64,000 bases of DNA. It comes from Macrostomum lignano (lineage: Eukaryota). The notes beneath the pieces are model-generated. The model saw nothing but the letters and a program-made list of their open reading frames with translations. It did no database searches and was not told the origin of the DNA. The translations under genes were made by a program, and so were the position numbers. Below are positions 1-64,000 of the stretch, in pieces (positions within the stretch are counted from its first letter, which is position 1; each line of letters opens with the position of its first letter). The stretch spans positions 1 through 64,000 of the forward strand of contig NIVC01000230.1 in NCBI GenBank assembly GCA_002269645.1, in the 5' to 3' direction.

Positions 1-6017
<6,017 letters not shown>

Positions 6018-15707: not shown

Positions 15708-16107
<400 letters not shown>

Positions 16108-22165: not shown

Positions 22166-22549
22166 TCGATTACCGATCAAAAGCAGTTGCGCTAAATGAA
22201 TCCAGCTGTTTTTCCTTCATTGGATATCAAAAGTTTAAACGGTCACCCTGGATGACAATAATGAAACACGAAAGTCCATCAATTAACCAATCCATTCAGT
22301 TGGGTTTGCAAATGTCAGAATAGCAGCGTCAGTATATTTATTAAAACTTGCAAAGCTACTGATAGAAAGTCTATGTGAATTGGCGATATGAAGATTCAAA
22401 CGCTTGAAGTTATTAGCCAGCAGTGCGTTGTAGTAGATTCCCAATTTATCCAGAATAGTAGCGCATACAGTTTCCATGCCTTTCCACACATAAGAAAACA
22501 TGAATTGTTTTAAGACGCTAGCTATAATAAAAAGGGCTTATAATAGAGA

Positions 22550-44513: not shown

Positions 44514-44768
44514 NNNNNNNNNNNNNNNNNNNNNNNNNNNNNNNNNNNNNNNNNNNNNNNNNNNNNNNNNNNNNNNNNNNNNNNNNNNNNNNNNNNNNNN
44601 NNNNNNNNNNNNNNNNNNNNNNNNNNNNNNNNNNNNNNNNNNNNNNNNNNNNNNNNNNNNNNNNNNNNNNNNNNNNNNNNNNNNNNNNNNNNNNNNNNNN
44701 NNNNNNNNNNNNNNNNNNNNNNNNNNNNNNNNNNNNNNNNNNNNNNNNNNNNNNNNNNNNNNNNNNNN
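44514..44768. other. assembly gap (255 N)
   Basis: Run of N. Confidence 1.
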
Positions 44769-44804: not shown

Positions 44805-45473
44805 GAAGCCGCACCATCCTGAGCACGATTCGGGACTGGCCGCCGTTCCACTCGACAAAGTGCGGAGGTCTTCATCCTGTCTGCTCCTGAGTCCGCTCTG
44901 ACTCCGAGTCCCGAGCCGACCCAGATTCGAGCTCGAACACCGTCGTCGAGCTCATCGTTCGTCGCCTCCAAGGCGTTCGGCTCGGCACCAACGACGCGGC
45001 CCTGACTGCTCGCTGGCCTGACAACTTCGAGGGCGCCTCGCCAGCCGGCCGCATCAACAGCTTCCTGATGAAGCGAACTCGCCAGTTCGTGCTGCTGCTC
45101 AGCAACGGCCTGCTCTGCTGCTCAGAGACGAGGCCGAGCTGCAGTGCGAGTTCCAAGCCTTCCTCGCTGCGAACTCGTTCAGACGCCGCCTGCTGGTAGT
45201 TCAGGTTGGACAGGTGAGACTCTCGCATCAGCTGAGTGTGCAGGTCTGAGTTTTGAGTAGCTTTGCCTCACTGCTGTGTGAGTGAGACATACAGTATCGA
45301 TCTTTATTCACTCGCAGGTGGACAGCCGGTCGAGAGCTCGCTACCGGCGCTGGCGAATCAGCGACTGGACGGGGGGAGTCCGGGCCGGCGACGAACTGGT
45401 TCGACATGAGCGCCGAGGACCGCAACGTCGAGGCACTGGGCTGTGGCTGGATGGCGTGCTGTACAAGAAGTGA
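44805..45473 (+). CDS. last two exons (44805-45213, 45318-45473) of a paralog of the double-TIR Toll-like receptor; several 1-bp deletions
   Basis: Near-identical to 56320-56704 and 56941-57100, with the same donor (GGACAG|GTGAGA) and acceptor (TCACTCGCAG|GTGGAC). Ends GVLYKK*. Confidence 0.85.
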
Positions 45474-46408
45474 CTCCTGAGCATGAAACTTTGATGAAGC
45501 GCACGAAAAAATTGATAGACAGTAAGAATGTTATCCAGTTCGACATGTAGAATTTAAATATTGAAAAATTAAAAGTGCAATAAATTGCAACCGAACATCA
45601 CTTTTTCATCGTAAAGATCCACCTTAAAAATATACAACATGTGAATTCGAGTGGTTGCTTCACGTCGACTAAGAGCCACTGGCCGGAAAAGAAGAAAGTG
45701 CTGGGGACTTCCTGCTGAACACAGGCAAAGAGCCGCAAGGCCGCTATCACCCTGGAAGGAAACCGTTAGCCATCAGATTACTCCTTGGTCAAGCGTCCAT
45801 CAGCACTGACCTACTGTACACTGGGACCTTATTGTGTTAGTTATAGGCAGGGGCTGTGTGTACCCTGACGCACTTTAAGCGACATTGTCACACAACCGGC
45901 GAGAGTCATTACTGCCCATTTCGCCGATTCCCCTGAGCAGGCATACAAGCTCGCGGATGCGCACGCAGTCATACGCACAGGCACACACTCACACAGGAGT
46001 GCACAGCAGCCCTAACTTCATTTATTGTTAGGCATGTACACTTCACTATGCCTTGTGAGTTGGCCCTCAATGACGTTAATTACACGAGCAGAGCCAAGCC
46101 GAAATTCCAATTTAGCTCCAAAAATGTGACTGCACTTGTGAATCGAGACTGGGCTGCTGGCACTGCCAGGACCTCAGCGCCAATGAAGCTGCTCAGCAAG
46201 TCCTCCCGCCATCACGCCAATCACGGAACAATATTGAAGATTGCATAGACAATGTAAGACAATGCTATCATCCTGAATTTGCAAGGGGTCTTGGATGCAA
46301 CAGTCCGGCCGTTAAATGTGTTAAATTGGGTTCCAATTAAAAGGAGCAATGAACTGACCTACCAACTAGTGTCTCTTTGTTGTCAATATCGAAGTAATAG
46401 CCTATTAA

Positions 46409-47411
46409 AAGGACAATGATGCAACTGGGGATCGCACGTCCTTCTTTACTAACTCATTCAAGCAATCCCCAGACTAACCTTCAAGCAATCCCAGACTAAC
46501 CTTCAAGCGATCCACAGACTAGCCTTCAAGCGATCCACAGACTAACCTTCAAGCGATCCCCAGACTAACCTTCAAGCGAGCCCCAGACTAACTTTCAACC
46601 AATCCACAGACTATCAAGCGATCCCCAGACTAACCTTCAAGCAATCCCCAGACTAACCTTCAAGCGAGCCCCAGCCTAACCTTCAACCAATCCACAGACT
46701 AGCCTTCAAGCGATCCCCAGACTAACCTTCAAGCAATCCCCAGACTAACCTTCAAGCAATCCCCAGACTAACCTTCAAGCAATCCCCAGACTAACCTTCA
46801 AGCAATCCCCAGACTAACATTCAAGCGAGCCCCAGACTAACCTTCAAGCGATCCCCAGACTAACCTTCAAGCAATCCCCAGAATAACCTTCAAGCAATCC
46901 CCAGACTAACCTTCAAGCAATCCCAGACTAACCTTCAAGCAATCCCAGAATAACCTTCAAGCAATCCCCAGACTAACCTTCAAGCAATCCCAGACTAACC
47001 TTCAAGCGATCCCCAGACTAACCTTCAAGTGATCCCCAGACTAGCCTTCAAGTGATCCCTACACTAACTAACCTTCAAGCGATCCACAGACTAACCTTCA
47101 AGCGAATCGGAGTTGATTAAACGCTCATAAGAGCAAAGCGTGACTATGTCAGGGGCAGATGAAAGCTGGTACATGTAGCTCGTAGATGCAGCTATATCAA
47201 GTATCACAAAGTCAAAGGTTAGTGTTGGCGCCAGCGTTCTTGATAGCTATAGCTTTTAAACTTCGTTTTACAACCTAAATCTGACAAATCTGACAATAAA
47301 TTAATCGGTGGTAATTACGACATATGAAATTTTAAATATTTTAAAGTCTGGGATTGCTTGAATGAGTTAGTGAAGGAAGGACGTGCGATCCCCAGTTGCA
47401 TCATTGTCCCT
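46409..47411. mobile_element. Kolobok-like non-autonomous element with TTAA flanks and an internal 23-bp array
   Basis: About 68-bp TIRs (A(A/G)GGACAATGATGCAACTGGGGATCGCACGTCC...). TTAA at 46405-46408 and 47412-47415. About 28 copies of AACCTTCAAGCAATCCCCAGACT at 46455-47105. Confidence 0.75.
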
Positions 47412-49639
47412 TTAATCGGCTTTAAACCAACTGTTTTTACGATTGCACGATGCAAACTTTGTTTTAGATTGTTTTCGCTATCAACCCGTTTGTATTGCTA
47501 AAGTCTATGCATTTGCCAGCAAGGATAGAGCCTGTGTCAGTTCGGAATTTCAACCTTTGCCAACCGGTTTGTTGTCAGCCTTCTCTCATGACACAAAAAA
47601 CTGCAGAAATTTTTCTCTCTTCGACTGGATACTATCCGAAAAATAGTTGCATACTAGATGACAAAAATAGTTTAGAAGAAAGCATCTATGCTTCCTAACC
47701 CTCGTTTTGCAGTATGTTAATAAAAAAAGTGTTCTGAAAACGCCACTAGCTGTACGATATTATGAAGCAGAATGTATGCGCACGAGCTGTGCAGACACAA
47801 GAAACGGCTGAAAGTTCCTTTTTTGTTTTTTATTTAAATCTACCCTGTCTGCAGGGTACTGGCAGACTGGCCAGTACCCTAGGAAGGAAACTGGCAGGGG
47901 GTATACTCGTATTATACTGCAATTGTCTCTTAGACTGCACTGTCTATATATAATTTTCAACCATTATAGAACTAGCATAATAAGAATATGTAATTACATG
48001 TACTTGTATTCGGATTGGCTCTTCTCCAACTGCTGCATGAACTCGATATGCATGTAAAATCTGAGATGGAGTTTAAATCTGACCTGCTAAATTCAAGCCT
48101 GATATTGTAATGGACATTATGTATCCTGTGCGACAACATTATCACAATATAAGTTAATTTAGTGCTTCAATTATGCTAGCACGACTCAGCGGGTATGATG
48201 TTGCCCCAGGCGTCAGGTCACTTGCGCGGTGATAAGCATGCAGCCCATAATCAAACGAAGCTTGCTTTCTGGTTCACAAGGACAGGTAGTGCTGCTGGAA
48301 GAAGACTTCAGCCTCATCAGGCATTGTGGTGAAGGGCGTTGTCCGCGCAGAATAGGGAATCTAGCTACTGCTTCAGATACTCTAACGGCCTCGTTGCTCC
48401 CTGGATGTGTGCAAATGTATTTAGTACATGTTGAAGGCCCAAGTTCTCTCTGTGAAGTGTCTGCATTGTTCTCCGTTGATGAACATTGCAGCTTGAGATC
48501 CAGGCTCTATGTACGAGTTGGACATAGCCAACAAGAAGATTCAAGTCCATTTAGACTTAACTTGTACATGTACGTCATTCTCGCGTGACACCACGGCATG
48601 GTTGTACATATTTTTCATCAAGTTGTACCTCGTTAGGATTTCGTCAGATGTCGCAGACTCAGTGGAGTGGTTCGATGGCTTAATTCTGTAGATGCTATTA
48701 CGGTCGTACTCTTGATTCCAAAAGTAAGTAGACCACGATTTATCGTTCAATATCTGTAATGTTTATTAGCTAAATACAGCTTTTCATAGTCTTCTATTGG
48801 CTATCGAATGTACAATAGATCTGCATCTGCGCCAGAAATATTTAATGACGCTAGCTACAAACTGTTCGATTGTTGACCTGCCCGAGACCTACTGAGCTGT
48901 TTTTGCCATCGCTCAGGCTGCAGCTATTTTTGCGTAGAACGCTTGTTTTTTCAGGAAATTGTCTACGGAGCAGTAGGAGCAGTAATTGTGCGTACATATT
49001 CGAGCAGGGTTTTTTTAAGACGAGCCTGTCCTCCGCAGGCACGCAATGACTGTACAGTTCCGTGCATGCACAAGAGAGATTAATAGCTAGTGTCTGTCGT
49101 GATGTGCTCAGGTGTGCTCAGGTTTATTATATAGGCTCTCCAACGCATTGCTACGCATACTTAATGATAAATAATATGCAGGAAAGCGAAAAATAAATTC
49201 TGCAATAAGTGTCTGCTATACGAGTAATTAACTTTTTCCAGGTAAGTACGAGTATTTTGTCTGAAACGTTTGGATAGATAAGCGAACAGAAAAATATTTA
49301 ATCTTGAAACATGCCTCGTTTAGTGTTTTCCTTAGCATGATGCAGCTATGCAAATTGTCAAGTCAAGAATCTTCCCGCTTGGTCATTACTTATTATCCAT
49401 ATGCTGACGGCTTTTGATGGTTAGTGAAACGGTTTTTACAAGCTCAAAATTTGAAATCGTCGAAAAAGTGTTGCTAAGCTAGCTCCAAGATTCGAGACTT
49501 CGATGTTGTTTCTTCGATTTGATGTTTCGATGTTGTCAAAAATTTTGTCTGGAATGATGTGAAATTCATGTCTACCCGACAATTGACTGCCACAGATTGA
49601 CTGCCAACCCTAACTTAAAAGCAAGCCAAAATTGGCACT

Positions 49640-49838
49640 GGCAGCCAAATGTCACTGACAGTCAAATGTCACTGACAGTCAAATGTCACTGACAGTCAAA
49701 TGTCACTGACAGTCAAATGTCACTGACAGTCAAATGTCACTGACAGTCAAATGTCACTGACAGTCAAATGTCACTGACAGTCAAATGTCACTGACAGTCA
49801 AATGTCACTGACAGTCAAATGTCACTGACAGTCAAATG
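49640..49838. repeat. 17-bp minisatellite, about 11.5 copies (AAATGTCACTGACAGTC)
   Basis: Each unit contains the palindrome TGTCA-C-TGACA. Confidence 0.97.
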
Positions 49839-49998
49839 ACGATGTTCCGTGAAATTTCGAGCTTGTGAAAGATTTCAAATTCTTGTGATTCCGAAACTTG
49901 TGTGGAGGGCAAAACATCGAGATAACTTTACTTTATGCGACTTAAGCTTGAATGAAAACATTTAATAAAAATGAAACATATAATTTTAATACTGTTAA

Positions 49999-51551
49999 CA
50001 AGGACCACTGTAGTAGAAGGACTCGGCACTCACGAACCATGGAAAAAGTTTTGAAGGCTGATTTTTAAAGTTTGATGCTGTCTCTTCAGAAACAGATATT
50101 AAGATGATGAGTTTGCATCCCTACTGCTCATTTGTCTGCCTGTTGCTTTCTTCTGTGATGCATTTGGAGTTCGCAGTAGGCGATTAACTATTTCCAGGTG
50201 AATATTAGAGCAGCAGGTACTTAGCCCCTATAACACAGTATCCATATCTGTACATACTGCCTGTACAGATGTTACAGACATACGCGTGGTAAATTTTGAA
50301 AAATCATTAAGGTTTATAAGCAAATTTTAAAACAATTATGGCATTGTACGAGATAGATGTCTCGTAGTTGAAAAGTCTTACGTTTAATTAGTCTGTGGTA
50401 CTGGGTAGCCATTTATTGGAAATAGCTAAGTGTACTAGAAAAAATTGACAGTAAAATGCATGAAAATGAGCAAAGCAGAAATAAAAGGCAAAATGTGAGA
50501 TCAGTAGAAACTTGGTATCAAAAATGCGACATTCTGGAAAACAAACATAAATTGACTGAACTCTGAAACAATGCAGAAAAGGTAACTGTAAGGCTATTTA
50601 TAACTAATACGGTAACACAATAATCATCTTTCTAAATCTGACTAAATTGCTAAATTAGGAATTGCACACCAACAAATAGATTGTGGCTGTACTGACACGG
50701 TGTGGAATTTCATTTTACTGGTGCGGAAGCCAGTGAGGAGGGGAGTGAGGGGATGGTGGGAAGGAAGGTTGAGAGTAGTAGTGTAGAGTGAGGGGATAGT
50801 TAGGAGGGGAAATGTTACCTGACTGCGCGCGTGCAACTATGTTGATGAAATGAAAACAGGTCGAACGGACCAAACTAATAAATAAATAATAATAAATGGA
50901 TTAAGAGCTGAGCTTAGCATCAAACTCAAATTCCTTCAATCTGTAGTGCATAGATATAGTCTACAGATACAGCAAATTTAAGTACTTAAGTACTTATTAA
51001 AATTTTCACAGAATATTATAATGAGTTGTAAATATTTCCTATCACTACATATAGGCCCTAGTTGTGTTGAACTGCAATTGTTTAGGCTAGGCTATGTTTA
51101 GTTGAGAGAACTAGGACTACAATCATTACAATCAACACAACTTATTAAACCATTAATTTCCAATAAGCAATAAACTGAAGAGATACAAGTTATTTATAAA
51201 GCAAAATTGCATTATACTTAGTGATCTAGGTCAATTAATAGAGTATTCTAAGCTAACATCTGGCTGATTATAGTTCTGGTTTCATTCTGACAAATCAAAA
51301 CATTAGTTTTGTTGGTACTAAGCAATTAACATTCAATACACGATTATTACAATGCTGTGAAATATAATTAAACCCTCAAAACGCATACAAAGTTTGAATA
51401 TGGCTACATATTATTGGCTTAGTGAAGAAAGCGAGTAGCAGAGAATTAAAAAATATGGTCGCACAAACAGACACAAAGCGTACGGAAAATCAGCCTTCAA
51501 TTTTTTTCCGTGGTTCGTGAGTGCCGAGTCCTTCTACTACAGTGGTCCTTG
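49999..51551. mobile_element. 1.55-kb non-autonomous TIR element with CAAGG termini (P- or hAT-like)
   Basis: 41-bp perfect inverted repeat CAAGGACCACTGTAGTAGAAGGACTCGGCACTCACGAACCA, imperfect to about 70 bp. No TSD seen; no internal ORF. Confidence 0.8.
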
Positions 51552-51626
51552 ATCAAAAACACACAAAAAATGACTGTTAACTTCTCCTTCGATTTACAAT
51601 ACCTTGTCATAGTACACAGCCAAGCG

Positions 51627-54600
51627 ATGCAAGCACCGACAGAAAGTCTCATACTGCTACTGGCGTGCACTCTGACGGCGCTCCTGCCGGCTGCTGCAGC
51701 TGCTCAGCCTCAGTTGGATGACGATCTGAACAAATACATTCTACTGCCGAAAAACTTCAGTCTAACGCACGAGTGCTGCTGCGAGAACATGATGAACTCG
51801 CCCAGGTTTGACTACTTCTGCCAGGTGTCTGAAAAACCCTACCCGAATGCCAGCTGCATGACTGGTCTGGTAGACTGCTCCGATCTGCCGGGCAGAATCG
51901 TGTACAGCTTGACGATAAACTGTACATCTTACCCATCTGTGACTGTCAATCTGCGAGCTCTCACCGTGGCTCACAACTCAAGCAGCATCGAGAACAAATC
52001 AGCTATCCGCCACAGCTGGTACATCTAGTGAACTGCAACGTAAACGGTTTCGAAGTTGGAATCCTTGAGCTGCCAGCTGAAAATGTCTCCCTCGATTACG
52101 GCATGGAAGTTGCACCGTTTGGAAGTCCGGATAGGCCGGGCGTTGGCGGTTACTACACTGTTAACGTCACTTATCCGCGTGAATTCCGCCAGGCTGACTG
52201 TTGGATGGTGGAATTGAACATTGAAAATGCAAGCACTCTTTGGTATCTGCCGTCCTACCTGTGTCACAAGTGCAACTCGCTCAAGAACATCTTCATATCT
52301 AATTCGTCAATCGAATGGATCTCGATTCGCGATGTTCTCTCTTTGCATAACGTACGAAGTTTTTCTCTGACCCACAGCCGCCTAAAGTACTTTGCAAGCG
52401 ACGCTCTGAGCACAGCTATCAATCTATTAGATAGATACCTGGAAGCTGGAGTGCAAACCGGCTGCATCAATGACACTGAAGCCGCGATCAAAGCTCTAAA
52501 CTCAATACGCAGCCGCACAGGACGGTTGAGTAGCCCCACCCAGCTATACGACACGATGGACACCGCCAATATCGACTTCACCCTGCTATTTGGCTACAGA
52601 TTGAGAAGCGCTTTCTCGGGCAATAAAACCGAGCCCGCCTGCGACATGCCTGGCAAGATGGCCCTAACCGATCTCGATTTGTCTTTCAACGCTTTGACGG
52701 ATATACCTTTCTCAATTAGCATGTTCGATCAGCTGAACCGGGTCAATCTTAGCCACAACAGAATCCGCAGTTTGTACCACGGCTGGATGTGCTGGTATCC
52801 GCCAATTCCCGAAGACCAGAAGAACACTTCAAACCGGCACTGCTATTGGTTCAGAGCGGCTCGAGCTAGTCTGAAGGTCCTGGACTTGTCATTTAACGAA
52901 ATCAATATGATCGGAGAGATACAGCCTTGGCACCAGGTGAGCTAATTATTAATACTAAATTGTTGGTTATCATTATACAAAGCAATTGAAAGGGAGTCAT
53001 TGAAGTTTGGTTGGTTGTGGCCGTTTCAAGACCCCGCATTCGTAAAGTGTTGGAACACGATGACACTGATATCGCTCACTCTGCGATCCTATCGATATGA
53101 GTAATAGTCGAACCGGTCGATAAATTGAACCTTCGCAGTAATCAGACACCGTTTTATGGCTCAATTATCTTTTCATTTAGCTCTTAGCCGACTACGTAAA
53201 AAATTGTTACAGAATGATCAAACAGATTTTTAGAAACCCATGAGTCGGGCTGTGTCATTTTAATGGTTTTAAGCAAATACTCATTTAAGTAAAAAAGATA
53301 TAAGCAAAACAATTTTTGTCTCGAAAAAAGGAAAAAAGTGTTTTTCCCTACTTTTTTCGGTTAATTCTGCCGTCTAATATTTTCAAAGAAACGCAATTGC
53401 TTCCCCACACTTGGCTGGGCCGTGTCTGTCTACGGTTAAATGCTTTTTCATTTCCTTGGCCAGGCCAAAGAAATGATTGGCTAGGCCAAAGAAATGAGCT
53501 CTCAGCTGGAGAATTCGGCCCAGAGAAGGGAAGAAGCGGAAAGTAAAGCTCTAAACCAAACTGACTGCAATCGATAGCTTTTCGGGCCGGTGGACTAGAA
53601 ACGCCGAGACATCTTATCCAGGTTTTTGCATGGGGCTTCCAGTTGATAAAATGAGGATTTCAGGTTAACATCAGTCTCTAGAATGAAGCTTTGCTGTGGG
53701 CTCCAATCATATGCATGTTTAACTTGAAAAAAATCAGTTAGTTAAGTGTCTCAAAGAATTTTAATATGATTTTTCAGAAAAAAATGTTTTCTTAAATTCA
53801 CCTCTCGGCTTCAGGTGGCGTTGTCGTATCTCATTCTCCGCGGGAACAGAATAATGAGCGTCAACCCGGATGCGTTCGCTTACTCGCCATTAGCCACGAG
53901 CTTGCTGAATTTATATCTGGATGAAAATCTTTTGTCGTATTTTCACCTGGAATGCCTGACCCGACTGGAAGTCCTGAGTCTCGAGGGCTGTCGAATCGCG
54001 AATATCGAGCAGGAATCGCTGCCCAAGTCGAAATCGCTCAGGGAAATCAATCTCGATAGCAACAGAATTTTCGCCATCGCTCCGGGCGTTTTTGAACAGC
54101 TTGAAAAGCTTGAGTTTGTTCGGCTACATCATAACAGGCTGATGCACTTTTATGCGAACAGTTTCAAAACGCCCCCAAGATCGACCTTGGCGTCCAGAGT
54201 CATCATACACATTGCCAACCAGAGCGATATACCCATATGCGACTGCAGCCACGTATATAAGAAGATACTGCAGGATGAGGAGTTTGGAAATCCCCAAAAA
54301 AGCTACGTTTATCCGAGGATTTTGCCAGAAGATATGTCCACCGAGTGCCAGTTCTTCTCCAGATTCAGCTCAACCAGAGTGGTAAAGAAACTAAGCGAAT
54401 CAAATCAAAGTGAGTTTCTATGTGAATTCCAGGACAATCAAAAGCACAAGCTGCCCTGGAATTACTGTAACGAAAACGTCACTATTATGGGTCGAGAAAA
54501 GTGCTTTGTGAAGTGCATCTACGGCTGCCGGTGTTACCACGATGACGGATGGGATATTTCTGACCTGGACTGCACCCCGGGCAATTCCACAGTCACCACC

Positions 54601-57114
54601 GACCTGGTTAAGATGCGATTCGAATTCCCAATCAAGTACATGTTCATGGCCGGACTTAAGGACTCGGAGTTCTTCCGGCACGTCTCCAAGGGATCATTTA
54701 AATGGTTGAACGAAAGCGATTCAAATGAATTACTGTTCTTGCAGCTGAATAATAGCAACGTCAAATATGTTGAGAAAGATGCGTTCGCAAATTTTGAGAA
54801 CATAGTTGTTATTTACCTGCACGACAACAATATTACCAGCATTAATCCGAGCCCTTTTATTGGAAACTGCTTTTTAAATAAAAATCTAAACCAGATCACG
54901 CTGCATAACAACAGAATGAACTACATCGACCCGGCAATAATTAATGGAACGTGTCCTGTGGGCCTTTCAGGTGTGAGCTTAAGCGGCAATCCGTGGCACT
55001 GCTCCTGCCATGGAAAATGGATCGAGCTCCACAAAACACTCATCCAGGACTCTAGAAAAACACAAACAGTATCGGACTTCCGAAATATGTATTGCACAAT
55101 TGACGCGTCTATAGTTGGTGCATGCACGGAGAACCGTGAAAATCTGCAATGGAGTGACGTATGCCAAAATGCAAATGATACGGCTAATTACCCAGTTGCC
55201 GACGAAGGCAGACTTGTCAAAGTTTGCGAGCTCATAGCGGACTCGGCAGTGCAGCAGCGAAGGCAGATCGTCCGGATGATTCTAACCTCAGTATTCGGTC
55301 TCGCGCTGCTCGGTGTCGCGATGCTCGCCGTCCGCCGTCGACACCGACTGCTGGCCGTGGTTCGAGTCCTCATCCTCCTCAAGTACCAGAGCAGTCGGCG
55401 ACTGCAGCAGCAGGCATCTCGGGACTCGCTGCCGTACGACGCGATGCTGTGGGCGTCGGACAGAGACCAGGACTGTCTGGTCGACGTGCTGAACTGCGTG
55501 CGCAGCGCCTCGGGCGGAGACGAGCTCGAGCTGTGCGTTCCGGAGAGCTTCCTCTACTCGGACCTGTGCTCCTGTCCACTCACCTACTTTGACTGTCCGG
55601 CTGAGGGAGCCAAGTTCAGCGGCAAGGTGGTGGTGGCTTTGTCCGAGAGGTTTCTCGACACCCAGTACCTGGCTCTGTGTCAGGTGATTCGAGAGCTCGA
55701 CAGCTTAGGTCGGAATCCGTTCAAGGACATCGTGTTTCTGCGCCTGAGCTCGCGCAGAGTGTCGCTTCAGCGCCAGAGACAGCTCGGACCTGAGGACGTG
55801 GAGGCGTTCCACACTCTGCAGAGAATCCTCGCAGAGAGCGACATCGAATACAAGTCCGTGGACTGGGAGTACAGACTCATCGAGCGCATTCGGAACCGAG
55901 ATCCGGCCGCTGTTCTCCTGTTGGACCGAACAGCGGAACTGGAGTTACCGACGGCAGCTGCTGGCGGTTCGGAAAGACCAGCCGCTACAGCAACTGCGGA
56001 GCTTCCTGATCTTCCTGACGATGAGCAGGCGCTGATTGTCGACGTTGAGCAGCCAGTTACGAGTAAGTATAACTGCCAGAGCTTTTTGTAGTCTCACTTG
56101 CCCCTTTAGTTGTTAATTTCGTTCCGAAAATTAAACTCTGATACGCAACTCTAGAGTACTACACGTAGCTCGTACATTGAGTTGAATTAGACATTTTCTT
56201 ATCTCGAGAAACTCATGATGCATCTAAAGAAACAATTTTTATTTGTAAAGCTCCAAGCTAACGTTTTAATCAACATATTCAAAAGTTCGAGCCGCCGCCG
56301 CTCCCGGTGCGGCTGTCAGTGACTGGCCACCGTTCCACTCGGACAAAGTGCCGGAGGTCTTCATCCTGTCTGCTCCTGAGTCCGCCTCTGACTCCGAGTC
56401 CCGAGCCGACCCAGATTCGAGCTCAAACACCGTCGTCGAGCTCATCGTTCGTCGCCTCCAAGGCGTTCGGCTCGGCACCAATGACGCGGCCCTGGCTGCT
56501 CGCTGGCCTGACAACTTCGAGGGCGCCTCGCCAGCCGGCCGCATCAACAGCTTCCTGATGAAGCGAACTCGCCAGTTCGTGCTGCTGCTCAGCAACGGCC
56601 TGCTCAGTTGGCTCAGAGACGAGGCCGAGCTGCAGTGCGAGTTCCAAGCCTTCCTCGCTGCGAACTCGTTCAGACGCCGCCTGCTGGTAGTTCAGGTTGG
56701 ACAGGTGAGACTGAGTGAGCAGGTGTGAGTTTTGAGTAGCTTTGCCTCACTGCTGTGTGAGTGAGACAGCTCTCCCTCACTGCTGTGTGTGAGTGAGACA
56801 GCTCTCCCTCCCTGCTGTGTGAGTGAGACAGCTCTCTCTCACTGCTTTGTGAGTGAGACAGCTCTCCCTCACTGCTGTGTGAGTGAGACAGCTCTCCCTC
56901 ACTGCTGTTTGAGTGAGTATCGATCTTTATTCACTCGCAGGTGGACAGCCGGTCGAGAGCTCGCTACCGGGCGCTGGCGAATCAGCGATTGGACGGCGGG
57001 GAGTCCGGGTCGGCGACGAACTGGTACGACATGAGCGCCGAGGACTGCGACGTCGAGGCGCTGGGGTTGTGGCTGGACGGAGTGCTGTACAAAAAGGCTG
57101 ATTTACGTAAATAA
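51627..57114 (+). CDS. multiple-cysteine-cluster (Toll-type) Toll-like receptor with two tandem TIR-like domains, about 1,380 aa; exons 51627-52936, 53815-56062, 56286-56704, 56941-57114; apparent 1-bp deletion near 52025
   Basis: Signal peptide MQAPTESLILLLACTLTALL; LRRs (LDLSFN, VNLSHN, LYLDEN, INLDSN, VRLHHN); internal LRRCT/LRRNT (PICDCSH..CFVKCIYGCRC); further LRRs; NPWHCSC; TM segment MILTSVFGLALLGVAMLAV; TIR1 (YDAMLW..LELCV..KVVVALSERFL); TIR2 (EVFILS..DNFEG..RQFVLLLS..CEF..RLLVVQ). All three introns are GT-AG and phase-compatible (0, 1, 0). Confidence 0.88.
56745..56917. repeat. 30-bp intronic minisatellite, 5-6 copies (GTGAGTGAGACAGCTCTCCCTCACTGCTGT)
   Basis: Read directly, in TLR intron 3. 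Confidence 0.95.
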
Positions 57115-57896
57115 TATTTAATTTTAAATTGGACATCCATGGCACATTTTGACTTGAATAGCTCGTACACTCTAAGAAACTAGAAAACGTAGACTTAAAT
57201 TCTGAAGTGTCATATAGACAATTTATATGTACTTATCCGTATATGGTATACGTACTTTAGTTGTTGAGGATTCAAACCTAGGCTACTATTAGTAGCTAGT
57301 ATAAATCTTCTCCACGAAGAAGTAGAAGAATTTATGCAGCGAATCTGTGCCATAGACCTATTTTTCGTATTTTGTACTTTATTTCCAGCTTTTTGACAGC
57401 GGTTTCTGGCAGACGTATCCGGAAGACGTTTGTCTTACTGTTTATTTGGTCGTGAGCTTTTTGGTCTTTTCGATTTCTTCATCGTGCGCCTATTTTTGTT
57501 TTGGAAAAAATCTTTAATCTTTTTTTAAGTTTTAATGCCTTCAGGTTGTTGCTGTCTTATTGTAGAGATCATCACTCGAAAACTTTTATAGCGAGCGTGT
57601 GAATTGGTTATAATTTTCTGGTAACTCTGCCATTTTTTTTCTTAGCTAAAGTACTAATCTTAGTTAGCTTAAAAATATGTACTTCCCTAAATTTTTAAAT
57701 ATCTGTATTAACAGAGTGTTTTTCATCGTTATCTATCGACAAATTATCCAAAAAGGTCGTGAGAACTTTTAACTTACGCCTGTGTACTTCTGAATGATAC
57801 ATGCAGCATATGAAGGAAGGTCTCAGTAGTCTATGGCTCTGAGCTGGCAGAGATTCTCGGACCTGAAAACGTCGGAGAGGTCCGCGTTTGGGCCGA

Positions 57897-58212
57897 GGTA
57901 GGTGAGCCTGTCCGTAGGTGAGCCTGTCCGTAGGTGAGCCTGTCCGTAGGTGAGCCTGTCCGTAGGTGAGCCTGTCCGTAGGTGAGCCTGTCCGTAGGTG
58001 AGCCTGTCCGTAGGTGAGCCTGTCCGTAGGTGAGCCTGTCCGTAGGTGAGCCTGTCCGTAGGTGAGCCTGTCCGTAGGTGAGCCTGTCCGTAGGTGAGCC
58101 TGTCCGTAGGTGAGCCTGTCCGTAGCTGAGCCTGTCCGTAGGTGAGCCTGTCCGTAGGTGAGCCTGTCCGTAGGTGAGCCTGTCCGTAGGTGCGCATGTC
58201 CGTAGGTGAGCC
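57897..58212. repeat. 16-bp minisatellite, about 19 copies (GTAGGTGAGCCTGTCC), expanded inside the LINE ORF
   Basis: Read directly. Confidence 0.97.
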
Positions 58213-58439
58213 TGGGGCGTTCACAGATGAAGTGCTCCGCATTCTCAACACCGGAGAGGCAGAATGGGCATTCCTCATTGCAGATTTTCCTCTTGAGGTA
58301 ACAACCGTGACCCGAGAGAGTCATGGTCACCGCCCTGATGTCCCTGCGGTTGAGTCCAAGTAGGGCCCCTCGAAGGGCGGTGGTAAGACAGGGGCCAGCC
58401 GCAGGCATTGCCGGTAGTCTGTGGCGTTAGAGGCATGCA

Positions 58440-59455
58440 ATAGTGGGCTCAGCACCAGGCTTACGAGCTACGGTCTGCGATCCTACACACCTGCACCCCC
58501 CCCCTTTATTCATGGTGCAGGAATGGCAGGAGAACTCTCTCCAAGCTGACTCACAAGCCGACCCAGGGGTTCACGTTCCGCATGTGTTCAAGGCAGCTCT
58601 AGGGCTGCTGGACTGACTGGGCTCCGGCGGTGGCAACCCATCCGTGGGCTTGGCCGCTTTGGGTACGGGCTCCGCCCGGAAGTGAACCTGTGCGTATCAG
58701 GTACCTCTGGCCACGGCTCTGAGGAACAGGTATCACCCTCTGACCTTAACAGGCTATGCGGCCAGTCCGCAGGCTCCGGGGACAGCCTTTTGTTCCCTCA
58801 AGGGCCCAGTGTACCACCGTGCTGATGCTCTTTTGGTTTGGCCTCTGGTTTTTCCAAGCCGGGCTCTTAGCCGGGGAGTTTCTCGGTTGCTAGCGGTCGG
58901 GCCGGTAAGGGCTTAAGCTACCCCCCGATCGCTACCTCTTGGCCTGGCTGTTGGGTTTGGGGTCACGGCGCAGCGTCTTCTCATCTCTAGCCCCCACTCG
59001 CCTTTCAGCGACTCATGGAGTATTCATTTACCTCCGCCACGTCCGAGGCTGCTGGAGCACCAAACAAGGTTGGTACCGCGGCTTAGCCGGACATTCGCAA
59101 CACCGGAACCTTGGGTGACTCTTAGTCAGCCCCTTCCGCCACTCAGGACAATACCGAAGTAGCTGGACAACAGGACGGCGGACCTCAGACCTCTAAAAAG
59201 AAGGCCCGTAGCATTGCTCGCTACAAAGCTTTTCTCCAGCCCAAAGCGGAGGAACGGAGGAGTGCGAAAGCCGCCTCTCCGGCCACCTCTGAGGAGGGTG
59301 CCGGTAACTCTGCGAATCTCGGAGAGAGGAGCCGACATCCGACAAGGCCCCTCCCGTGGTGGGACCTCTGCCCGTGTGGAAACTCCCACGGCCGCGGAGA
59401 GATCCAAAGCGGGGGACGCTGGCCAACTCTCCGGAGGAGCACCTCTCCGGTTCTT
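58440..59455 (+). mobile_element. about 1-kb GC-rich insert in the LINE, resembling the 5' UTR and ORF1 start of a LINE in opposite orientation
   Basis: Interrupts the minus-strand frame between LWVASK and HASNATDYRQC. The plus strand has a hairpin-rich leader, then broken low-complexity basic frames (SKKKARSIARYKAF..; GPSRGGTSARVETP). Confidence 0.4.
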
Positions 59456-60464
59456 TGATGCCACCCACAGGTTGATCCGAGTCGTGACAACGGGGGCCAC
59501 AGACAGGGGACCAGTAAAAGAACCGGTCGAGCCAGCCTTGGCCAGGCGATCGGCCAGCTTGTTGTCGGGGAGGTCCGAGTACCCCGGGATCCACCTTAGG
59601 GACACATTGTAGGAGGCGCTGAAGAGGTTAGGCTGCGCGATGCAGTCGAGGACTGTACGGAAGCTGGTGGTGGTACGTTCAAGTGGATAGGCGCTTGACT
59701 GTCTGAGTGGAGGATAATCTCCTTCCCCCGAACACGCTGATTGTACGGCTCCATGGCGCAGGAGCTGATGTCGAGAACTTCGTTCTGGAAGAAAACGGTA
59801 GAGCAGGTGCCGATTTGCTGGGAGAAGGTCTTCGCGGTTCTCCCTCCAGACACGATGCAGTAGCCGTAACCAGAGGCGGAGTTGATTTGGGACCCGTCAG
59901 TGAAGCAGTGAGTTTCACGGGCTTTCCAGTTGTCCCTTGTTTCGTGACGTGGTGGAATGCTGGTTTTGAATTTGAGCGAAGGACAGAGCGAGAACGGGAT
60001 TCCATCCGAGAGGGTCGACAGGCCTCCCACTGCTTTGATGTACGGCCGGAGGTTCCGCTTTCTGAAGGCGAGCAGACGGCGGGTGGTCTTCATTGCCTCC
60101 CTTCTGACAAAGAGGTCAAGGGGGAAGGTCCAGGAAGGTGCTCATTGCTGATAAGGGCGTCATGATAGCTCGACAAGCCCGGCCCTGCACCCTGTTAAGA
60201 GCTTCATGAACCCCTTTCACCTTCAGGGCACTGTTCGAATGAAGCTGGCAAAAGAGATGCCGGTCTCATAATGGAAGTGTACATCCACCAGAGGCGGCGG
60301 GGTGAAGCCACAGCTATAGCGCCGAGCAAACCCAGGAAGACTTTGAGCCGGCGAAGTGGGACTGCAAGATTTGCTCTCGCAATTTTCACCCCCATTACTT
60401 CATTGAAGCATCGGGTGGATATCAATGCATACGTAATAAGAGAAGCGAGTCGCTGTCAAGGAGG

Positions 60465-61330
60465 TGTCTGAAGCCTGGAGTGGTTCTATCCATCTTCCAG
60501 AACTCTCCTAATCTGAAAAGAAGGCACCGCGAGCAACGACAGTGACATCCTGTACGTACGCATCTCAGACGTACTCAGACATGAGCATGGAGAGAGAGAG
60601 AGAGAGAGCAGAGAGAGAGAGAGACGGAAGAAAGGATTAATGTCTTTCTGGAAGATTACTTCATTGTTGAGACGGACCTTCAGGAGATTCGGCGCAAGCT
60701 GAGCAGGAAGTGACCAAGCTAACTGAAGTTCAGACGGCTATCCAGGACCAAAAGCTCTGCGTCTTTATGCTATAGAGACACAGCCAGTGTGTCGTGTTTC
60801 TTGCTACATCTGCCTGGAAGAAGACCTTACTGTCACCTCGCCGGCAGAAGACCAAGACAATGAACTGCCGCTAAAAGCAAGCAAGAGGAAACACTTTGAC
60901 TCTCAGTCAGCTTGTGACTCTCATACTGAGAATAAAGTATTGAACGGAAGATTCCTGCAAGGCCGAGTCGCCACCTGAGACCAAGGTCTCTAGTCTGCTG
61001 GATGCGGTGCAAGACCTCTTGGAGGAAGGAGATGGGCTGAAGGACAATCGGACTGTGAGCTTTGCACTGGAGCAGTTGAAGCTGAGCAAGAAACCATAGT
61101 GCACAGGATGAGGTACTCCGAGGATCTCCTTGTGTTCTACTTGATACAACACCATGCTTGAGCAGGACGCCACCTGCCTCCCATCTGATCGCACGCCGAT
61201 GTCCATCACTGTAAAAGTTGGATCCTCAAGTGGCCTTGACAGCCAAGGGCTACCTTGAACTCTGAGAGCTTCAAAGCTGTCACAGATGGAGAAGGTCGTG
61301 ATCCTGGTCATCGACGAGATCTATATCGTC
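60465..61330 (+). pseudogene. THAP/P-element-like transposase N-terminal relic
   Basis: LKPGVVLSIF (THAP AVPTIF-like box), EQLKL, MRYSEDLLVF, CLPSDRT and EKVVILVIDEIYI occur in the expected order, with stops and frameshifts. Confidence 0.6.
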
Positions 61331-62662
61331 ATAATGTTAAAATTATTATATTAGTAGTAGAAGTGTCTCCAAATGAATCGCTTTTGTATGCTGTTGGTTG
61401 TTAAGACTTTCGTTACAGCCCTCTGAGAGATAAAACGCCCCCTGTTACTAACACAATAGCTGGGAATCGCTGCCAAAATGCGTGTGGGGAGCTTCCAGTC
61501 CAGTGATACTATTTCGAGGAGTCCCTGCTTTGACATACATGCACTCAGCCTATACATGTACACCACGAGGCCGTCCGTCCCAATCTCTAATAAATTTGAC
61601 ACTTTCTTTTTCACTAGCCGGCCATAAACTTTCTTTGGGTCAAGAACTGGCTCTCGTGTTGTCTGCTTCTCATTTTAATCGCAGATTGTTGACTCTTCAT
61701 AAGGTTTATATAAGGTTTATGGTAAGGTTAACAGCTTTTCTAAAGATTGAAAAATGAAAAATGAAATGAAAACTGATCGAAGCCATTTTGACGGCTGAGA
61801 AGGACTCAGCAGTCATTTTGCAGTTATTCTCCTTAAAATAATCGCTCAAATGCTTTTTTACTACTGCTAGTAGTACTCGAAAGAAAACTTTTCCTGCTGC
61901 TCGAACGTCCAACAAAACGTTATAAATTATATTATTAGTTCTTACAGCTCGGCCGGCAGATTCACGTCAAGCCAGTCAGTCAACTCGTTGATTAGCCATC
62001 CGCCCTGGAAGAATCGGCATGGAAGACCTAATTTCCCCAACCCGGCTTTCCTGCTATTCCAATATCATTCATCACGTATGAACGTATGTGCGTTTTAAAT
62101 CGTTTCATAAGTACCAACAATTGAAATATAAAAAACGCATTGAGCCTTCATAGAAGCTAACTTTAGTTACCATGAATTAGTTAAACTCGCAAGAATCGAA
62201 AGATTCAAGGTTCCTTTGGTTTGGTGAGATTTAAAGCATAATATCAGGAACTGCAAGTCTTTAAATTCGATGAAATCAATATTTCGCGCTTGTGATCTTG
62301 AATGTCCAGGTTCACCCTTAGGGACTGCACTGATTGCAGAACAACTAAACAGAATGCCACTGTAAATGCTGTTATTAAATTTAGAAAGTCAAGCTAATGA
62401 TTATTATCAGTTTGCCATCCAGGGTCTGGAGCTATCTAGCCATTTACTTGATGTTTTTGCGCAAATGGCGTTTCCTGTCATGCACGAATTTCTGCAAGCA
62501 TCGCAAGTTTTTGTTTATTTCGCAGAACATTTCTGCCTATGAAAGTTTGGTGCTTCTTCGCAGATAGTTAAAGACAATAAGCTAACTATATCAGTGCCTG
62601 ATGACGCCTTGTATTGAATCATTTTCTGGTTCCAAATCTTCTTTTTTAAAGCGTCACGTCGA

Positions 62663-63349
62663 AAAGGACGACTTAAGAAGGACGGGAAACCTCATTTCTA
62701 GGAAATATTTTGAAGGCAGGCTTTTCCGAAAACATACACTACGGAGATAGGAAGTTTTCATTATTTCAACACAAAAATTGTTTTTGCTTTTGATAGGAGG
62801 CAGATCCAGTGTTCATCTTTTGATATGTTGTGCTTGTCTTATTGCTCTATCGATATTTATAAAGCTTTTCGTTTAAAGAATTAGGATTCTATGTTAATTT
62901 TTACTCTACGTAATTTTCCTGCACTTAACAATCATAAAATGCATGGCACAGCTCCAATCTTTGGATTTATGAATCTATTTTATCATCTCTGTTACACATA
63001 TTTGTTACACAGTCAGCTAAGAATGATAAAATAGACTCATAAAACCAAAGAGCTGAGCCGTGCCATTTTAATGGTTTTTTAGGCACAAGACACGTGCAAA
63101 TGTACGTAGAATAAAAATTAACATAGAATCCTAATTCTTTAAACGAAAAGCTTTACAAATATCGATAGAGCAATAAGACAGGCACAGCATATCAAAAGAT
63201 GAACACTGGATCTGCCTCCTATCAAAAGCAATAACAATTTTTGTGCTGAAAAAAAGAAAACTTCCTATCTCCGTAGTGTATTTTTTCGTGAAAAACCTGC
63301 CTCCAAAAATTTTCTAAGAAACGAGGTCCTTATACTTAAGTCGTCCTTG
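62663..63349. mobile_element. foldback MITE, 687 bp, with an 8-bp TSD CACGTCGA (P or hAT superfamily)
   Basis: CACGTCGA at 62655-62662 and 63350-63357. Terminal AAGGACGACTTAAG inverted repeat; imperfect arms of about 325 bp around a roughly 35-bp spacer. Confidence 0.9.
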
Positions 63350-64000
63350 CACGTCGAGTGGGCTCAGTTAGCATTACTTTATTAACATTTCTGTATCCTC
63401 AACGAGACTTAAAAAGAAGCAGTGCTTGGACTGTGAAGCCTACATTGTTTCGCATATTCGTACAAAACGCGTACATTTGTTAGGGCTTGGCCATTCCTTC
63501 TTTGGTCAGCTCGAGCGCTGCGTCAGAGCGTAAATTTATAAGCTATTTAGTTGCTGCCTAGCAGAACTCCAGCCACCAATACTATCTTCATTTTGAGAGC
63601 TCGCTATTCGAGCAAAATAGCATTTCAAATTTGGAGTTGTCTATCTATCTCGGCTCAAGAGAGTCGTTATCTAACTTGGGTAGTTATATAGCTAGAGCTA
63701 TATACTACACTGCACAGATATGTGCGCTGGCACACGCCATTTACGCTTCGGGCTATTTGCTAATTTGTAAATATGTACGCGCTTGAAATGCTCGCAATTG
63801 TTCAATAGAGAGAGGGAGAGACCAGGTGGGGAGAGACGTAGAGAAGAGATCAGCATAGTTACGCTGTATGTAATTCGCAGGGCGTTGAGGCGGGTGGACA
63901 ACCATTCCGCAGCGCGATGGTTTATAGTAATAAAATGCATACAAGTCATTTATAGAACCCCTGTTTTCTTTTTGAATGCATTGGGTCTGCGCCCTCTGCG

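What the first reader, a model, noticed from the sequence alone, without database searches (positions are those of the whole stretch)
51627..57114. Toll-type receptor with two different TIR domains in tandem
The ORF track ends the receptor at 56091. A strong donor ACGA|GTAAGT (56062/56063) is phase-compatible with the acceptor at 56285 and adds a second TIR-like domain across two exons. Canonical TLRs have one TIR; a receptor carrying its own second TIR could act as a receptor-adaptor fusion that bypasses MyD88 or SARM recruitment. Both TIRs are highly divergent (TIR1 BB-loop reads PESFLYS instead of RDFxPG). A paralogous module at 44805-45473 indicates a family.
Basis: partly seen in the sequence, partly recalled or inferred. 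Interest (0 to 1): 0.85.

Follow-up and report, generated by a model that had tools for sequence, protein, structure and literature searches.

The report
Flatworm Toll receptor with extra domain
This is a gene of the flatworm Macrostomum lignano for a Toll-like receptor whose signalling (TIR) domain is too divergent for standard searches, followed by a second conserved domain that may or may not be another TIR; it matters mainly because flatworms are reported to have no Toll-like receptors.

Summary
The sequence observation holds. The window is Macrostomum lignano DNA. The four-exon model (51627-52936, 53815-56062, 56286-56704, 56941-57114) matches a 1383-aa GenBank protein, BOX15_Mlig017824g1, whose annotation comes from an RNA-seq transcriptome. 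Both junctions are therefore already annotated.

The ectodomain is a protostome-type Toll ectodomain. Domain 1, just after the membrane helix, is a very divergent TIR: it fails Pfam, but a Toll-TIR profile gives E 7e-8 and hhalign gives 93%.

Domain 2, the claimed second TIR, is real and conserved. Three paralogue lineages carry it, down to about 30% identity, and the phase-1 intron in front of it sits at the same position. Its fold remains unproven. Pfam, PADLOC, NCBIfam and PDB give nothing, hhalign gives 7.6%, and two AlphaFold runs reached only pLDDT 37-41. Only weak, in-register similarity to TIR strand C, helix C and strand D remains (p about 1e-3).

TLRs with two TIR domains are already known in bivalves. 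The copy in this window has a 1-nt deletion in exon 1. The module at 44805-45473 is the 3' end of a tandem paralogue.

The more interesting point is that published surveys report no TLRs in M. lignano or any other flatworm.

The parts
51627..52936 (+). Coding exon 1: start ATG, signal peptide (MQAPTESLILLLACTLTALLPAAAAA) and the N-terminal part of the LRR ectodomain. It ends at the donor CAG|GTGAGC in phase 0.
   Evidence: Pfam LRR_8 hit at 5e-9. Matches P0001 residues 1-437.
51995..52028 (+). A 1-nt deletion relative to the annotated copy: the window lacks a G after 51995. It shifts the frame and gives a TAG at 52026-52028. This is either a real inactivating allele or an assembly error.
   Evidence: P0001 reads ...SSIENEISYPPQLVHL....
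52937..53814 (+). Intron 1 (GT..AG). All intronic differences from the L001 copy lie in this intron.
53815..56062 (+). Coding exon 2: the remaining LRRs, the internal cysteine clusters, the membrane-proximal LRRCT, the membrane helix, domain 1 and most of the linker.
   Evidence: Pfam LRR_8 hit at 9e-21. 100% protein identity to P0001.
54235..54576 (+). Internal LRRCT-LRRNT cysteine clusters (CDC...FLC...C.CYHDDGW....DC). This is the hallmark of protostome-type (P-type, multiple cysteine cluster) Toll ectodomains.
   Evidence: phmmer alignment to Toll-family proteins over residues 487-864, 65 bits, E 8e-22. Coordinates.
55267..55332 (+). Membrane helix IVRMILTSVFGLALLGVAMLAV, followed by RRRHR.
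   Evidence: Read directly from the sequence. No predictor was run.
55429..55917 (+). Domain 1 (D1): a highly divergent TIR domain. It has box-1-like YDAMLWAS. In the profile alignment the BB-loop region LCVPESFLYSDLCSC replaces LCLhyRDxxPG. Strand C is KVVVALSERFL.
   Evidence: Toll-TIR HMM: 18.3 bits, E 7e-8, 0 of 3000 shuffles reach it. hhalign: 93%, E 2.8e-7 over 76 columns. Pfam TIR does not hit it. The paralogue's D1 reaches only E 0.11.
55918..56062 (+). Ala/Pro/acidic low-complexity linker, first part. It continues in exon 3 to 56320. It is highly diverged between the tandem paralogues (52% nucleotide differences), while D1 and D2 are 98-99% identical.
56063..56285 (+). Intron 2, phase 1, GTAAGT...AAAAG. 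If it is retained, translation stops at 56089-56091. That would give a receptor with one intracellular domain, as in database model P0002.
   Evidence: A homologous phase-1 intron sits at the same distance (13 residues) from the WPP motif in paralogue P0064.
56286..56704 (+). Coding exon 3: the end of the linker and, from 56321, the first 128 residues of domain 2 (D2), from DWPPFHS... to ...RRLLVVQVGQ.
   Evidence: The first in-frame ATG is at 56558, inside D2, so D2 cannot be made complete on its own.
56705..56940 (+). Intron 3, phase 0. It contains a 30-nt tandem repeat, 5.9 copies at 56738-56917. This intron is absent from paralogue P0064.
56941..57114 (+). Coding exon 4: the C-terminal 57 residues of D2 and the TAA stop at 57112-57114.
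44805..45473 (+). The last two coding exons (44805-45213 and 45318-45473) of the neighbouring tandem paralogue, of the Mlig004240 / P0003 / P0074 type. They encode its D2. The rest of that gene is missing behind the N gap at 44514-44768. This copy carries seven 1-nt deletions that the GenBank copy lacks.
   Evidence: Collinear with the 3' end and downstream flank of BOX15_Mlig004240g1 in L003.

Best explanation
The locus is one copy of a Macrostomum lignano gene, an allele or homeologue of BOX15_Mlig017824g1. It encodes a protostome-type Toll-like receptor.

Shown. The gene has four coding exons. The protein has a signal peptide, an LRR ectodomain with internal LRRCT-LRRNT cysteine clusters, one membrane helix, a very divergent TIR domain (D1), a low-complexity linker of about 60 residues, and a C-terminal domain of about 185 residues (D2). 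Two further exons encode D2. D2 is an integral and conserved part of the receptor. Three paralogue lineages carry it, down to about 30% identity, and the phase-1 intron in front of it is in a homologous position. In the tandem paralogue, D1 and D2 are kept nearly identical at the DNA level while the ectodomain and linker have diverged about 50%. That pattern fits gene conversion or a very recent exchange of exactly these two modules.

Inferred mechanism. Ligand binding dimerises the ectodomains and brings the D1 TIRs together, as in other Toll receptors. D2 is most likely a degenerate, TIR-derived alpha/beta module; I put that at about 0.55. It would sit in cis as a second homotypic-interaction surface. 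It could raise the valency of the signalling platform, acting like an adaptor, or it could gate D1. D1 has lost the RDxxPG BB-loop motif. D2 keeps an invariant PDxFE..GAS motif, which is consistent with a division of labour between the two domains, but that is speculation.

The copy in this window is interrupted by a 1-nt deletion in exon 1. That is either an assembly error or an inactivated duplicate.
For: - Identity and splicing. The spliced model equals P0001 (1383 aa, 99% identity, 100% coverage). The GenBank annotation of this assembly derives from a genome-guided RNA-seq transcriptome (PMC5730564).
- Toll ectodomain. Pfam LRR hits. Alignment to Toll, Tollo and 18w proteins through CDC..FLC..C.CYHD.GW..DC..GNxWxCxC.
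- D1 as a TIR. HMM from 22 Toll TIRs: 18.3 bits, E 7e-8, 0 of 3000 shuffles. The D1 of the distant paralogue scores 9.0 bits, also 0 of 3000. hhalign gives 93%. In the reverse search, the best D1 hit falls inside the TIR in 16 of 22 Toll proteins.
- D2 is conserved. P0064 (Mlig015932) matches at 28% identity over query residues 2-429. There are 47 invariant D2 columns across paralogues. The intron phase and position are conserved. P0074 and P0075 carry D2 too.
- D2 cannot start on its own: the first in-frame ATG is at 56558, inside D2.
- Mosaic divergence between the tandem paralogues. Nucleotide differences are 1.4% in D1 and 2.2% in D2, against 49% in the ectodomain and 52% in the linker.
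- Hints that D2 is TIR-like. Toll-TIR HMM hit on profile positions 60-109, 5.9 bits, reached by 3 of 3000 shuffles. In the reverse search the best hit lies inside the TIR in 9 of 15 Toll proteins, 8 of them at the same offset. The 440-aa AlphaFold model shows a beta-alpha-beta secondary-structure pattern. The top, non-significant Foldseek hit is the IL-18R-beta TIR.
Against: - D2 has no significant match to any TIR model. Pfam, PADLOC and NCBIfam give nothing. PDB sequence and profile searches give nothing. hhalign gives 7.6%.
- The D2 of the distant paralogue scores at chance level: 153 of 3000 shuffles reach its score.
- Both AlphaFold models are low confidence, at pLDDT 40.8 and 36.8. The fold is therefore untested.
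- The D1 match covers only the N-terminal half of the TIR profile, and D1 fails Pfam's threshold.
- RNA support for the junctions is indirect. It comes from the annotation pipeline applied to a 98.6%-identical copy; no reads were examined here.
- The reading frame in this window is broken at 51995.
- No functional data exist.
Confidence: 0.7

Rival explanations
1. D2 is not a TIR at all. It is a lineage-specific C-terminal domain, either regulatory or a docking site. It would be comparable in role to the C-terminal tails that follow the TIR in Drosophila Toll and the long Tolls. The Toll tail is reported to be inhibitory; that point is from my own knowledge and was not checked here.
For: - No TIR model detects D2.
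- hhalign gives 7.6%.
- D2 of P0064 scores at chance.
- D2 has no similarity to D1.
- D2 has no relative outside M. lignano among 1.84 billion representative proteins.
Against: - The weak similarity that exists is in register with TIR strand C, helix C and strand D, and it recurs across diverse Toll proteins.
- Alternating strands and helices are predicted, not a disordered tail.
- 47 invariant columns show a folded, constrained domain.
Confidence: 0.4
2. The copy in this window is a dead duplicate (pseudogene) of the functional gene. It was inactivated by the frameshift at 51995, so nothing is made from this particular locus.
For: - As assembled, a 1-nt deletion gives a stop at 52026.
- The genome has extensive duplicated blocks at 95% identity or more (PMC5730564).
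Against: - It is the only indel across the 4152 coding bases.
- The other 18 exonic differences leave exon 2 (750 aa) identical in protein.
- Within this window, the paralogue fragment next to the N gap shows seven 1-nt deletions that the GenBank copy lacks. That is the signature of sequencing or assembly error.
Confidence: 0.3
3. The fusion is an annotation artefact. The receptor ends at 56091, and D2 belongs to a separate downstream transcript that the transcript assembler merged with it.
For: - A database model ending at the read-through stop exists (P0002).
- A third D2 copy sits inside a chimeric gene model (P0063).
Against: - The same fusion is annotated in three paralogue lineages on different contigs.
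- The splice phase is compatible with a fusion, and the intron position is conserved at 30% protein identity.
- Exon 3 has no in-frame ATG before the middle of D2.
- The open frame runs from the acceptor onwards.
Confidence: 0.07

Closest known systems
Protostome-type (P-type, multiple cysteine cluster) Toll receptors, such as Drosophila Toll, 18-wheeler and Tollo (Toll-8) and their arthropod orthologues
   Same: Signal peptide. LRR ectodomain interrupted by an LRRCT-LRRNT cysteine cluster that includes the C.CYHD.GW....DC motif. Membrane-proximal LRRCT. Single membrane helix. A TIR directly after the membrane.
   Different: Only 21-25% identity, and confined to the ectodomain. D1 lacks the RDxxPG BB-loop and the WC..E motif and fails Pfam TIR. 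It carries a conserved extra domain of about 185 residues after the TIR. It occurs in a phylum reported to lack TLRs (PMC8609888, PMC7958881).
Twin-TIR TLRs of bivalves: HcToll-2 of Hyriopsis cumingii, two loci in the Pacific oyster, and Loripes orbiculatus (Ren et al. 2014 and Gerdol et al. 2017, as cited in PMC5845394 and PMC6836662)
   Same: An LRR-membrane receptor with two intracellular globular domains in tandem.
   Different: In bivalves both domains are recognisable TIRs. Here D2 is not recognisable as a TIR by any curated model, and D1 only by a custom profile. No sequence relationship to the bivalve proteins was found: there was no hit outside M. lignano. If D2 is a TIR, the architecture probably arose independently.
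TIR adaptor proteins (MyD88, SARM) and receptor-adaptor assemblies
   Different: No death domain, SAM or ARM region is present. No detectable homology of D2 to any adaptor TIR. Nothing was tested functionally. Planarians are reported to have MyD88 and SARM homologues (PMC7958881), so a bypass is not required.

Membership tests
Toll-like receptor (criteria of PMC8609888: at least one LRR, a membrane helix and a TIR) | Extracellular leucine-rich repeats | tested here: met
   Pfam LRR_8 at 9.4e-21 and 5e-9, both above the gathering score.
Toll-like receptor (criteria of PMC8609888: at least one LRR, a membrane helix and a TIR) | Single membrane helix between the LRRs and the intracellular domain, plus a signal peptide | tested here: met
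   A 22-residue hydrophobic stretch, IVRMILTSVFGLALLGVAMLAV, followed by RRRHR (55267-55332). A hydrophobic N-terminus. Both were read from the sequence. No dedicated predictor was available.
Toll-like receptor (criteria of PMC8609888: at least one LRR, a membrane helix and a TIR) | Intracellular TIR domain | tested here: met
   D1 against an HMM of 22 Toll TIRs: E 7e-8, 0 of 3000 shuffles. The paralogue's D1: 0 of 3000. hhalign: 93%. UniRef names P0001, P0003 and P0064 'TIR domain-containing protein'. Caveats: Pfam TIR is not reached (no hit for this gene; E 0.11 and 12.7 bits against a 21.3-bit cut-off for the paralogue). Only the N-terminal half of the profile aligns.
P-type / multiple-cysteine-cluster Toll subfamily | More than one LRRCT, with an internal LRRNT cysteine cluster | tested here: met
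   An internal CDC...FLC...C.CYHDDGW..DC cluster at 54235-54576 and a second LRRCT, NPWHCSCHG, at 54988. Both align to the corresponding motifs of Toll-family proteins. The Pfam LRRCT and LRRNT models themselves did not hit.
Twin-TIR TLR | A second intracellular domain that is itself a TIR | tested here: inconclusive
   Pfam, PADLOC, NCBIfam and PDB give no hit. hhalign gives 7.6%. The Toll-TIR HMM gives 5.9 bits, reached by 3 of 3000 shuffles, but the paralogue's score is reached by 153 of 3000. AlphaFold pLDDT is 36.8-40.8. Foldseek gives nothing at E 0.001 or better.
Twin-TIR TLR | Both domains encoded in one transcript and one polypeptide | tested here: met
   The transcript-derived GenBank CDS joins them in three paralogue lineages (PMC5730564). 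The phase-1 intron is conserved. Reads were not inspected directly.
Enzymatic (NAD-cleaving) TIR domains, SARM1 / plant / bacterial type | Catalytic glutamate in the WC..E region at the start of helix C | not testable with these tools
   In the profile alignment D1 has no Glu at that position. D2 has a W followed by acidic residues (SWLRDE in this gene, RWFQED in the paralogue). Without a reliable structural alignment the equivalence cannot be judged.

The most novel reading that the evidence does not exclude
Flatworms did not lose Toll-like receptors outright. The early-branching Macrostomorpha keep a small, fast-evolving family of protostome-type Toll receptors, and domain-based surveys miss them because the TIR is so divergent. 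In this family the intracellular part has become a two-module unit. D2 would be a previously unrecognised, highly derived TIR subfamily that works with D1 as a built-in adaptor. Concerted evolution between tandem paralogues keeps both modules homogeneous while the ectodomains diversify.
Probability: 0.3. Interest if true: 0.7.

Novelty: new variant of a known kind. Interest (0 to 1): 0.5.

Why it matters
Reviews and a dedicated survey state that Platyhelminthes, M. lignano explicitly included, have no TLRs (PMC8609888, PMC7958881). That statement shapes ideas about how flatworms sense microbes and about repeated loss of the Toll pathway in Spiralia.

Here, LRR-membrane proteins with a Toll-type ectodomain and a detectable but very divergent TIR exist in at least three paralogue lineages of M. 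lignano. If that holds, the "loss" is partly a detection failure. M. lignano is also a transgenic model, so the function of these receptors can be tested.

The conserved second domain would then be either an independent second origin of the twin-TIR layout known from bivalves, or a new signalling module. Against this: the gene model is already in GenBank, UniRef already names the protein as TIR-containing, and the central claim of a second TIR is unproven.

Tried and rejected
1. The search for homologous proteins with the intracellular region and with the D2 alignment returned nothing. They did not even return the proteins that contain the query (P0001, P0064). These negatives are a blind spot of the word index, not evidence. 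The index-free search is the valid negative.
2. Pfam, PADLOC and NCBIfam scans of D1 and D2 from two paralogues found nothing apart from Pfam TIR at E 0.11 on the D1 of P0064.
3. PDB sequence and profile searches gave only chance hits.
4. AlphaFold2 on the 440-aa intracellular region (4-row alignment) and on D2 alone (3 rows) gave pLDDT 40.8 and 36.8. Foldseek on both models found no match at E 0.001 or better. TIR entries appear among generic alpha/beta folds (RPS4 TIR at rank 6, MyD88 TIR at rank 37, IL-18R-beta TIR at rank 1), but not significantly. The alignment cannot be deepened, because no relatives outside M. lignano are in the databases.
5. D2 as an internal duplicate of D1 is rejected: hhalign E is 0.19 and 0.51.
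6. D2 as an all-helical death domain is rejected, because the 440-aa model predicts alternating hydrophobic strands and helices.
7. dN/dS between paralogues is not informative. The close paralogues differ at only 7-12 nucleotides in D1 and D2, and the distant one is saturated.
8. The look-up of encoding contigs found no record for P0003.

Full report
**What the window is.** A search with the spliced protein returned a 1383-aa protein of the free-living flatworm Macrostomum lignano as top hit. It is 'hypothetical protein BOX15_Mlig017824g1', which UniRef names 'TIR domain-containing protein', at 99% identity over 100% of the query. Its gene lies on NIVC01001362.1 of assembly GCA_002269645.1. 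That contig is collinear with window 45809-64000 at about 98.6% identity. The window is therefore another allelic or duplicated copy of the same locus. The assembly is known to hold 180 Mb of duplicated blocks at 95% identity or more (PMC5730564).

**Check of the observation.** All coordinates are right.
- The ORF 53815-56091 ends ...PVTSKYNCQSFL*.
- The donor TTACGA|GTAAGT ends the exon at 56062 in phase 1. The acceptor CAAAAG| starts the next exon at 56286.
- The next intron runs from GGACAG|GTGAGA (56704/56705) to CTCGCAG| (56940/56941). The stop is at 57112-57114.
- With exon 1 (51627-52936) the product has exactly the length and sequence of P0001.
- The GenBank annotation of this assembly was made from a genome-guided RNA-seq transcriptome, using StringTie, TACO and de novo transcripts (PMC5730564). 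The junctions therefore have indirect RNA support. I did not see reads.
- The read-through version exists as a separate database model, P0002. Intron-2 retention would give a receptor with one intracellular domain.
This window lacks one G after 51995 relative to the annotated copy, which puts a stop at 52026. It is the only exonic indel.
- The paralogue fragment next to the N gap in this window shows seven 1-nt deletions that the GenBank copy lacks. I therefore think an assembly error is somewhat more likely than a real pseudogene, but I cannot decide.

**The ectodomain.** Pfam finds LRR_8 well above threshold. The best hits outside Macrostomum are Toll, Tollo and 18-wheeler-type receptors (E 1e-15 to 3e-25). 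The alignment runs through the diagnostic internal cysteine clusters, CDC...FLC...C.CYHD.GW....DC, and the membrane-proximal GNxWxCxC. This is a protostome-type (multiple cysteine cluster) Toll ectodomain. It is followed by a 22-residue hydrophobic helix and RRRHR.

**Domain 1 (55429-55917).** Pfam does not detect a TIR. The D1 of the distant paralogue reaches only E 0.11. PDB searches find nothing.
- An HMM built here from 22 arthropod Toll TIRs matches D1 at 18.3 bits, E 7e-8. None of 3000 shuffles reach that score. The D1 of the 30%-identical paralogue scores 9.0 bits, also 0 of 3000.
- hhalign gives 93% probability over 76 columns, covering strand A to strand C.
- In the reverse direction, the best D1 hit falls inside the TIR in 16 of 22 Toll proteins.
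- I accept D1 as a TIR that has lost the RDxxPG BB-loop motif and the WC..E motif.

**Domain 2 (56321-56704 plus 56941-57111).** This is the core of the finding. It is certainly a real, constrained domain.
- A full HMMER scan of 1.84 billion representative proteins with the 440-aa intracellular region found only M. lignano proteins. Among them was P0064 (BOX15_Mlig015932g1, 1357 aa), matching at 28% identity over query residues 2-429.
- Full-length alignment shows the same layout: LRR, membrane helix, D1, linker, D2. There are 47 invariant D2 columns, including WPP, RRL, PDxFE..GAS, KxTRQFVxLL, W...D, RRxLV and YRxLA.
- In the P0064 gene the intron before D2 is also phase 1. Its split codon lies 13 residues before the W of WPP, exactly as in the window gene. 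The intron is therefore homologous, and the fusion predates the divergence of the paralogues.
- Exon 3 has no in-frame ATG before the middle of D2.

**Whether D2 is a TIR remains open.**
- Pfam, PADLOC and NCBIfam give nothing. PDB sequence and profile searches give nothing.
- hhalign against the Toll-TIR profile gives 7.6%, E 0.005.
- D1 and D2 are not similar to each other.
- The positive signs are weak. The Toll-TIR HMM aligns D2 in register over strand C, helix C and strand D (TRQFVLLLSNGLLSWLRDE...RRLLVVQ), at 5.9 bits, reached by 3 of 3000 shuffles. The D2 of the distant paralogue is at chance, with 153 of 3000.
- A D2 HMM run against full-length Toll proteins puts its best hit inside the TIR in 9 of 15 proteins, and in 8 of those at the same offset. 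Those proteins are related to each other, and the scores are around zero.
- AlphaFold2 with the only alignments obtainable (3-4 rows) gave pLDDT 40.8 and 36.8. The secondary-structure string of the 440-aa model has the beta-alpha alternation expected for a TIR or flavodoxin-like fold. The D2-only model shows only part of that pattern.
- Foldseek gave no significant match. The IL-18R-beta TIR was the top hit for D2 at E 0.48.
- I put the chance that D2 has a TIR-type fold at about 0.55.

**The family and the module at 44805-45473.** The module is not an isolated domain. It and its downstream flank are collinear, at 96-100% identity, with the 3' end of BOX15_Mlig004240g1 (P0074, of the P0003 type) in L003. 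The window therefore holds the tail of a tandem paralogue about 6 kb upstream of the gene. Its 5' part is lost behind the N gap at 44514-44768.

The two tandem paralogues show a mosaic pattern. Nucleotide differences are 49% in the ectodomain and 52% in the linker, but only 1.4% in D1 and 2.2% in D2. Intron 3 also aligns between the two. That pattern points to gene conversion or recent exchange of just the two intracellular modules, while the ligand-binding part diversifies. A third D2 copy, 91% identical, sits inside a chimeric gene model, P0063.

**How it most likely works.**
- Shown: the architecture, the splicing as annotated, the conservation of D2, and the TIR nature of D1.
- Inferred: ligand-driven dimerisation of the ectodomain brings the D1 TIRs together, as in other Toll receptors. 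D2 acts in cis, either as a second TIR-like interaction surface that raises the valency of the signalling platform, or as a gate on D1.
Planarians are reported to have MyD88 and SARM homologues (PMC7958881). The idea was not tested.

**Comparison with what is known.**
- TLRs with two TIRs are described in bivalves: HcToll-2, two oyster loci, and Loripes (PMC5845394, PMC6836662). The layout as such is not new, although it has been described only there.
- The gene model is in GenBank, and UniRef names the protein as TIR-containing.
- What is not in the literature I could search is any TLR in flatworms. A dedicated survey lists 0 TLRs for M. lignano and concludes that Platyhelminthes lost them (PMC8609888). 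A planarian review says the same (PMC7958881).
- That survey screened first with a TIR HMM, which would miss D1. This family therefore looks like a set of cryptic, highly derived Toll-like receptors in an early-branching flatworm.

**Verdict.** I class it as a new variant of a known kind, with interest 0.5.
- It is a real and somewhat surprising receptor family.
- Its headline feature, a second TIR, is unproven.
- Its two-domain layout has precedent.
- Its gene model is already public.

Noticed in passing
window 1-6000: About 6 kb of (ATCT)n tetranucleotide microsatellite: GC 0.25, GC skew about -0.93, with scattered single-base errors or variants.
   Followed up: partly
window 55240-57114 compared with L003 7100-8806: Mosaic divergence between the tandem paralogues. 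D1 and D2 are 98-99% identical in DNA, and intron 3 also aligns between them. The linker between D1 and D2 and the ectodomain are about 50% diverged. This suggests two separate gene-conversion tracts covering exactly the two intracellular domains.
   Followed up: partly
window 56738-56917; L001 20517-21414: The 30-nt tandem repeat inside intron 3 (5.9 copies) also forms a long array in inverted orientation about 9 kb downstream of the gene on the other contig. It is shorter in the paralogue's intron: about 1 copy in the window fragment and about 3 in L003.
   Followed up: partly
window 57695-60165, minus strand: A probable remnant of a non-LTR retrotransposon directly downstream of the gene. 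It has ORFs with a motif that looks RNase-H-like (LRWIPGYSDLPDNKLADRLAKAGS) and a C-terminal Cys motif (CPFCLSGVENAEHFICERP). A 16-nt tandem repeat of 19.8 copies at 57898-58214 interrupts it. There is no Pfam hit. The same sequences appear inside the chimeric protein model P0063.
   Followed up: partly
window 44514-44768 and 44805-45473: An N gap of 255 bases. The 670 bases after it carry seven single-base deletions relative to the GenBank copy of the same gene. This suggests low-quality sequence at the gap edge, and it bears on whether the exon-1 frameshift at 51995 is real.
   Followed up: partly
window 13247-14077 (+) and 43689-44383 (-): Two ORF sets share motifs (FPFENY...IKKR, HLPEF / HLLQHL). 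They are probably two copies of one transposon family. There is no Pfam hit.
   Followed up: no
window 32115-34156 (-): ORFs of 570 aa and 216 aa in a GC-rich block (GC 0.55-0.58). The only hit is a weak zf-AD match, E 2e-5, below the gathering score. It may be a transposon or a lineage-specific gene.
   Followed up: no
window 15575-16187, 21149-22195, 40904-41456: Several minisatellite arrays give long spurious ORFs in several frames (CLSV repeats, TGDVT repeats, KQQCVKTAPI repeats).
   Followed up: no
tool behaviour: the search for homologous proteins failed to return even the database proteins that contain the query when the query was the C-terminal 186-440 residues of these 1350-aa proteins. 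Negatives from that tool for C-terminal domains of long proteins should not be trusted.
   Followed up: yes
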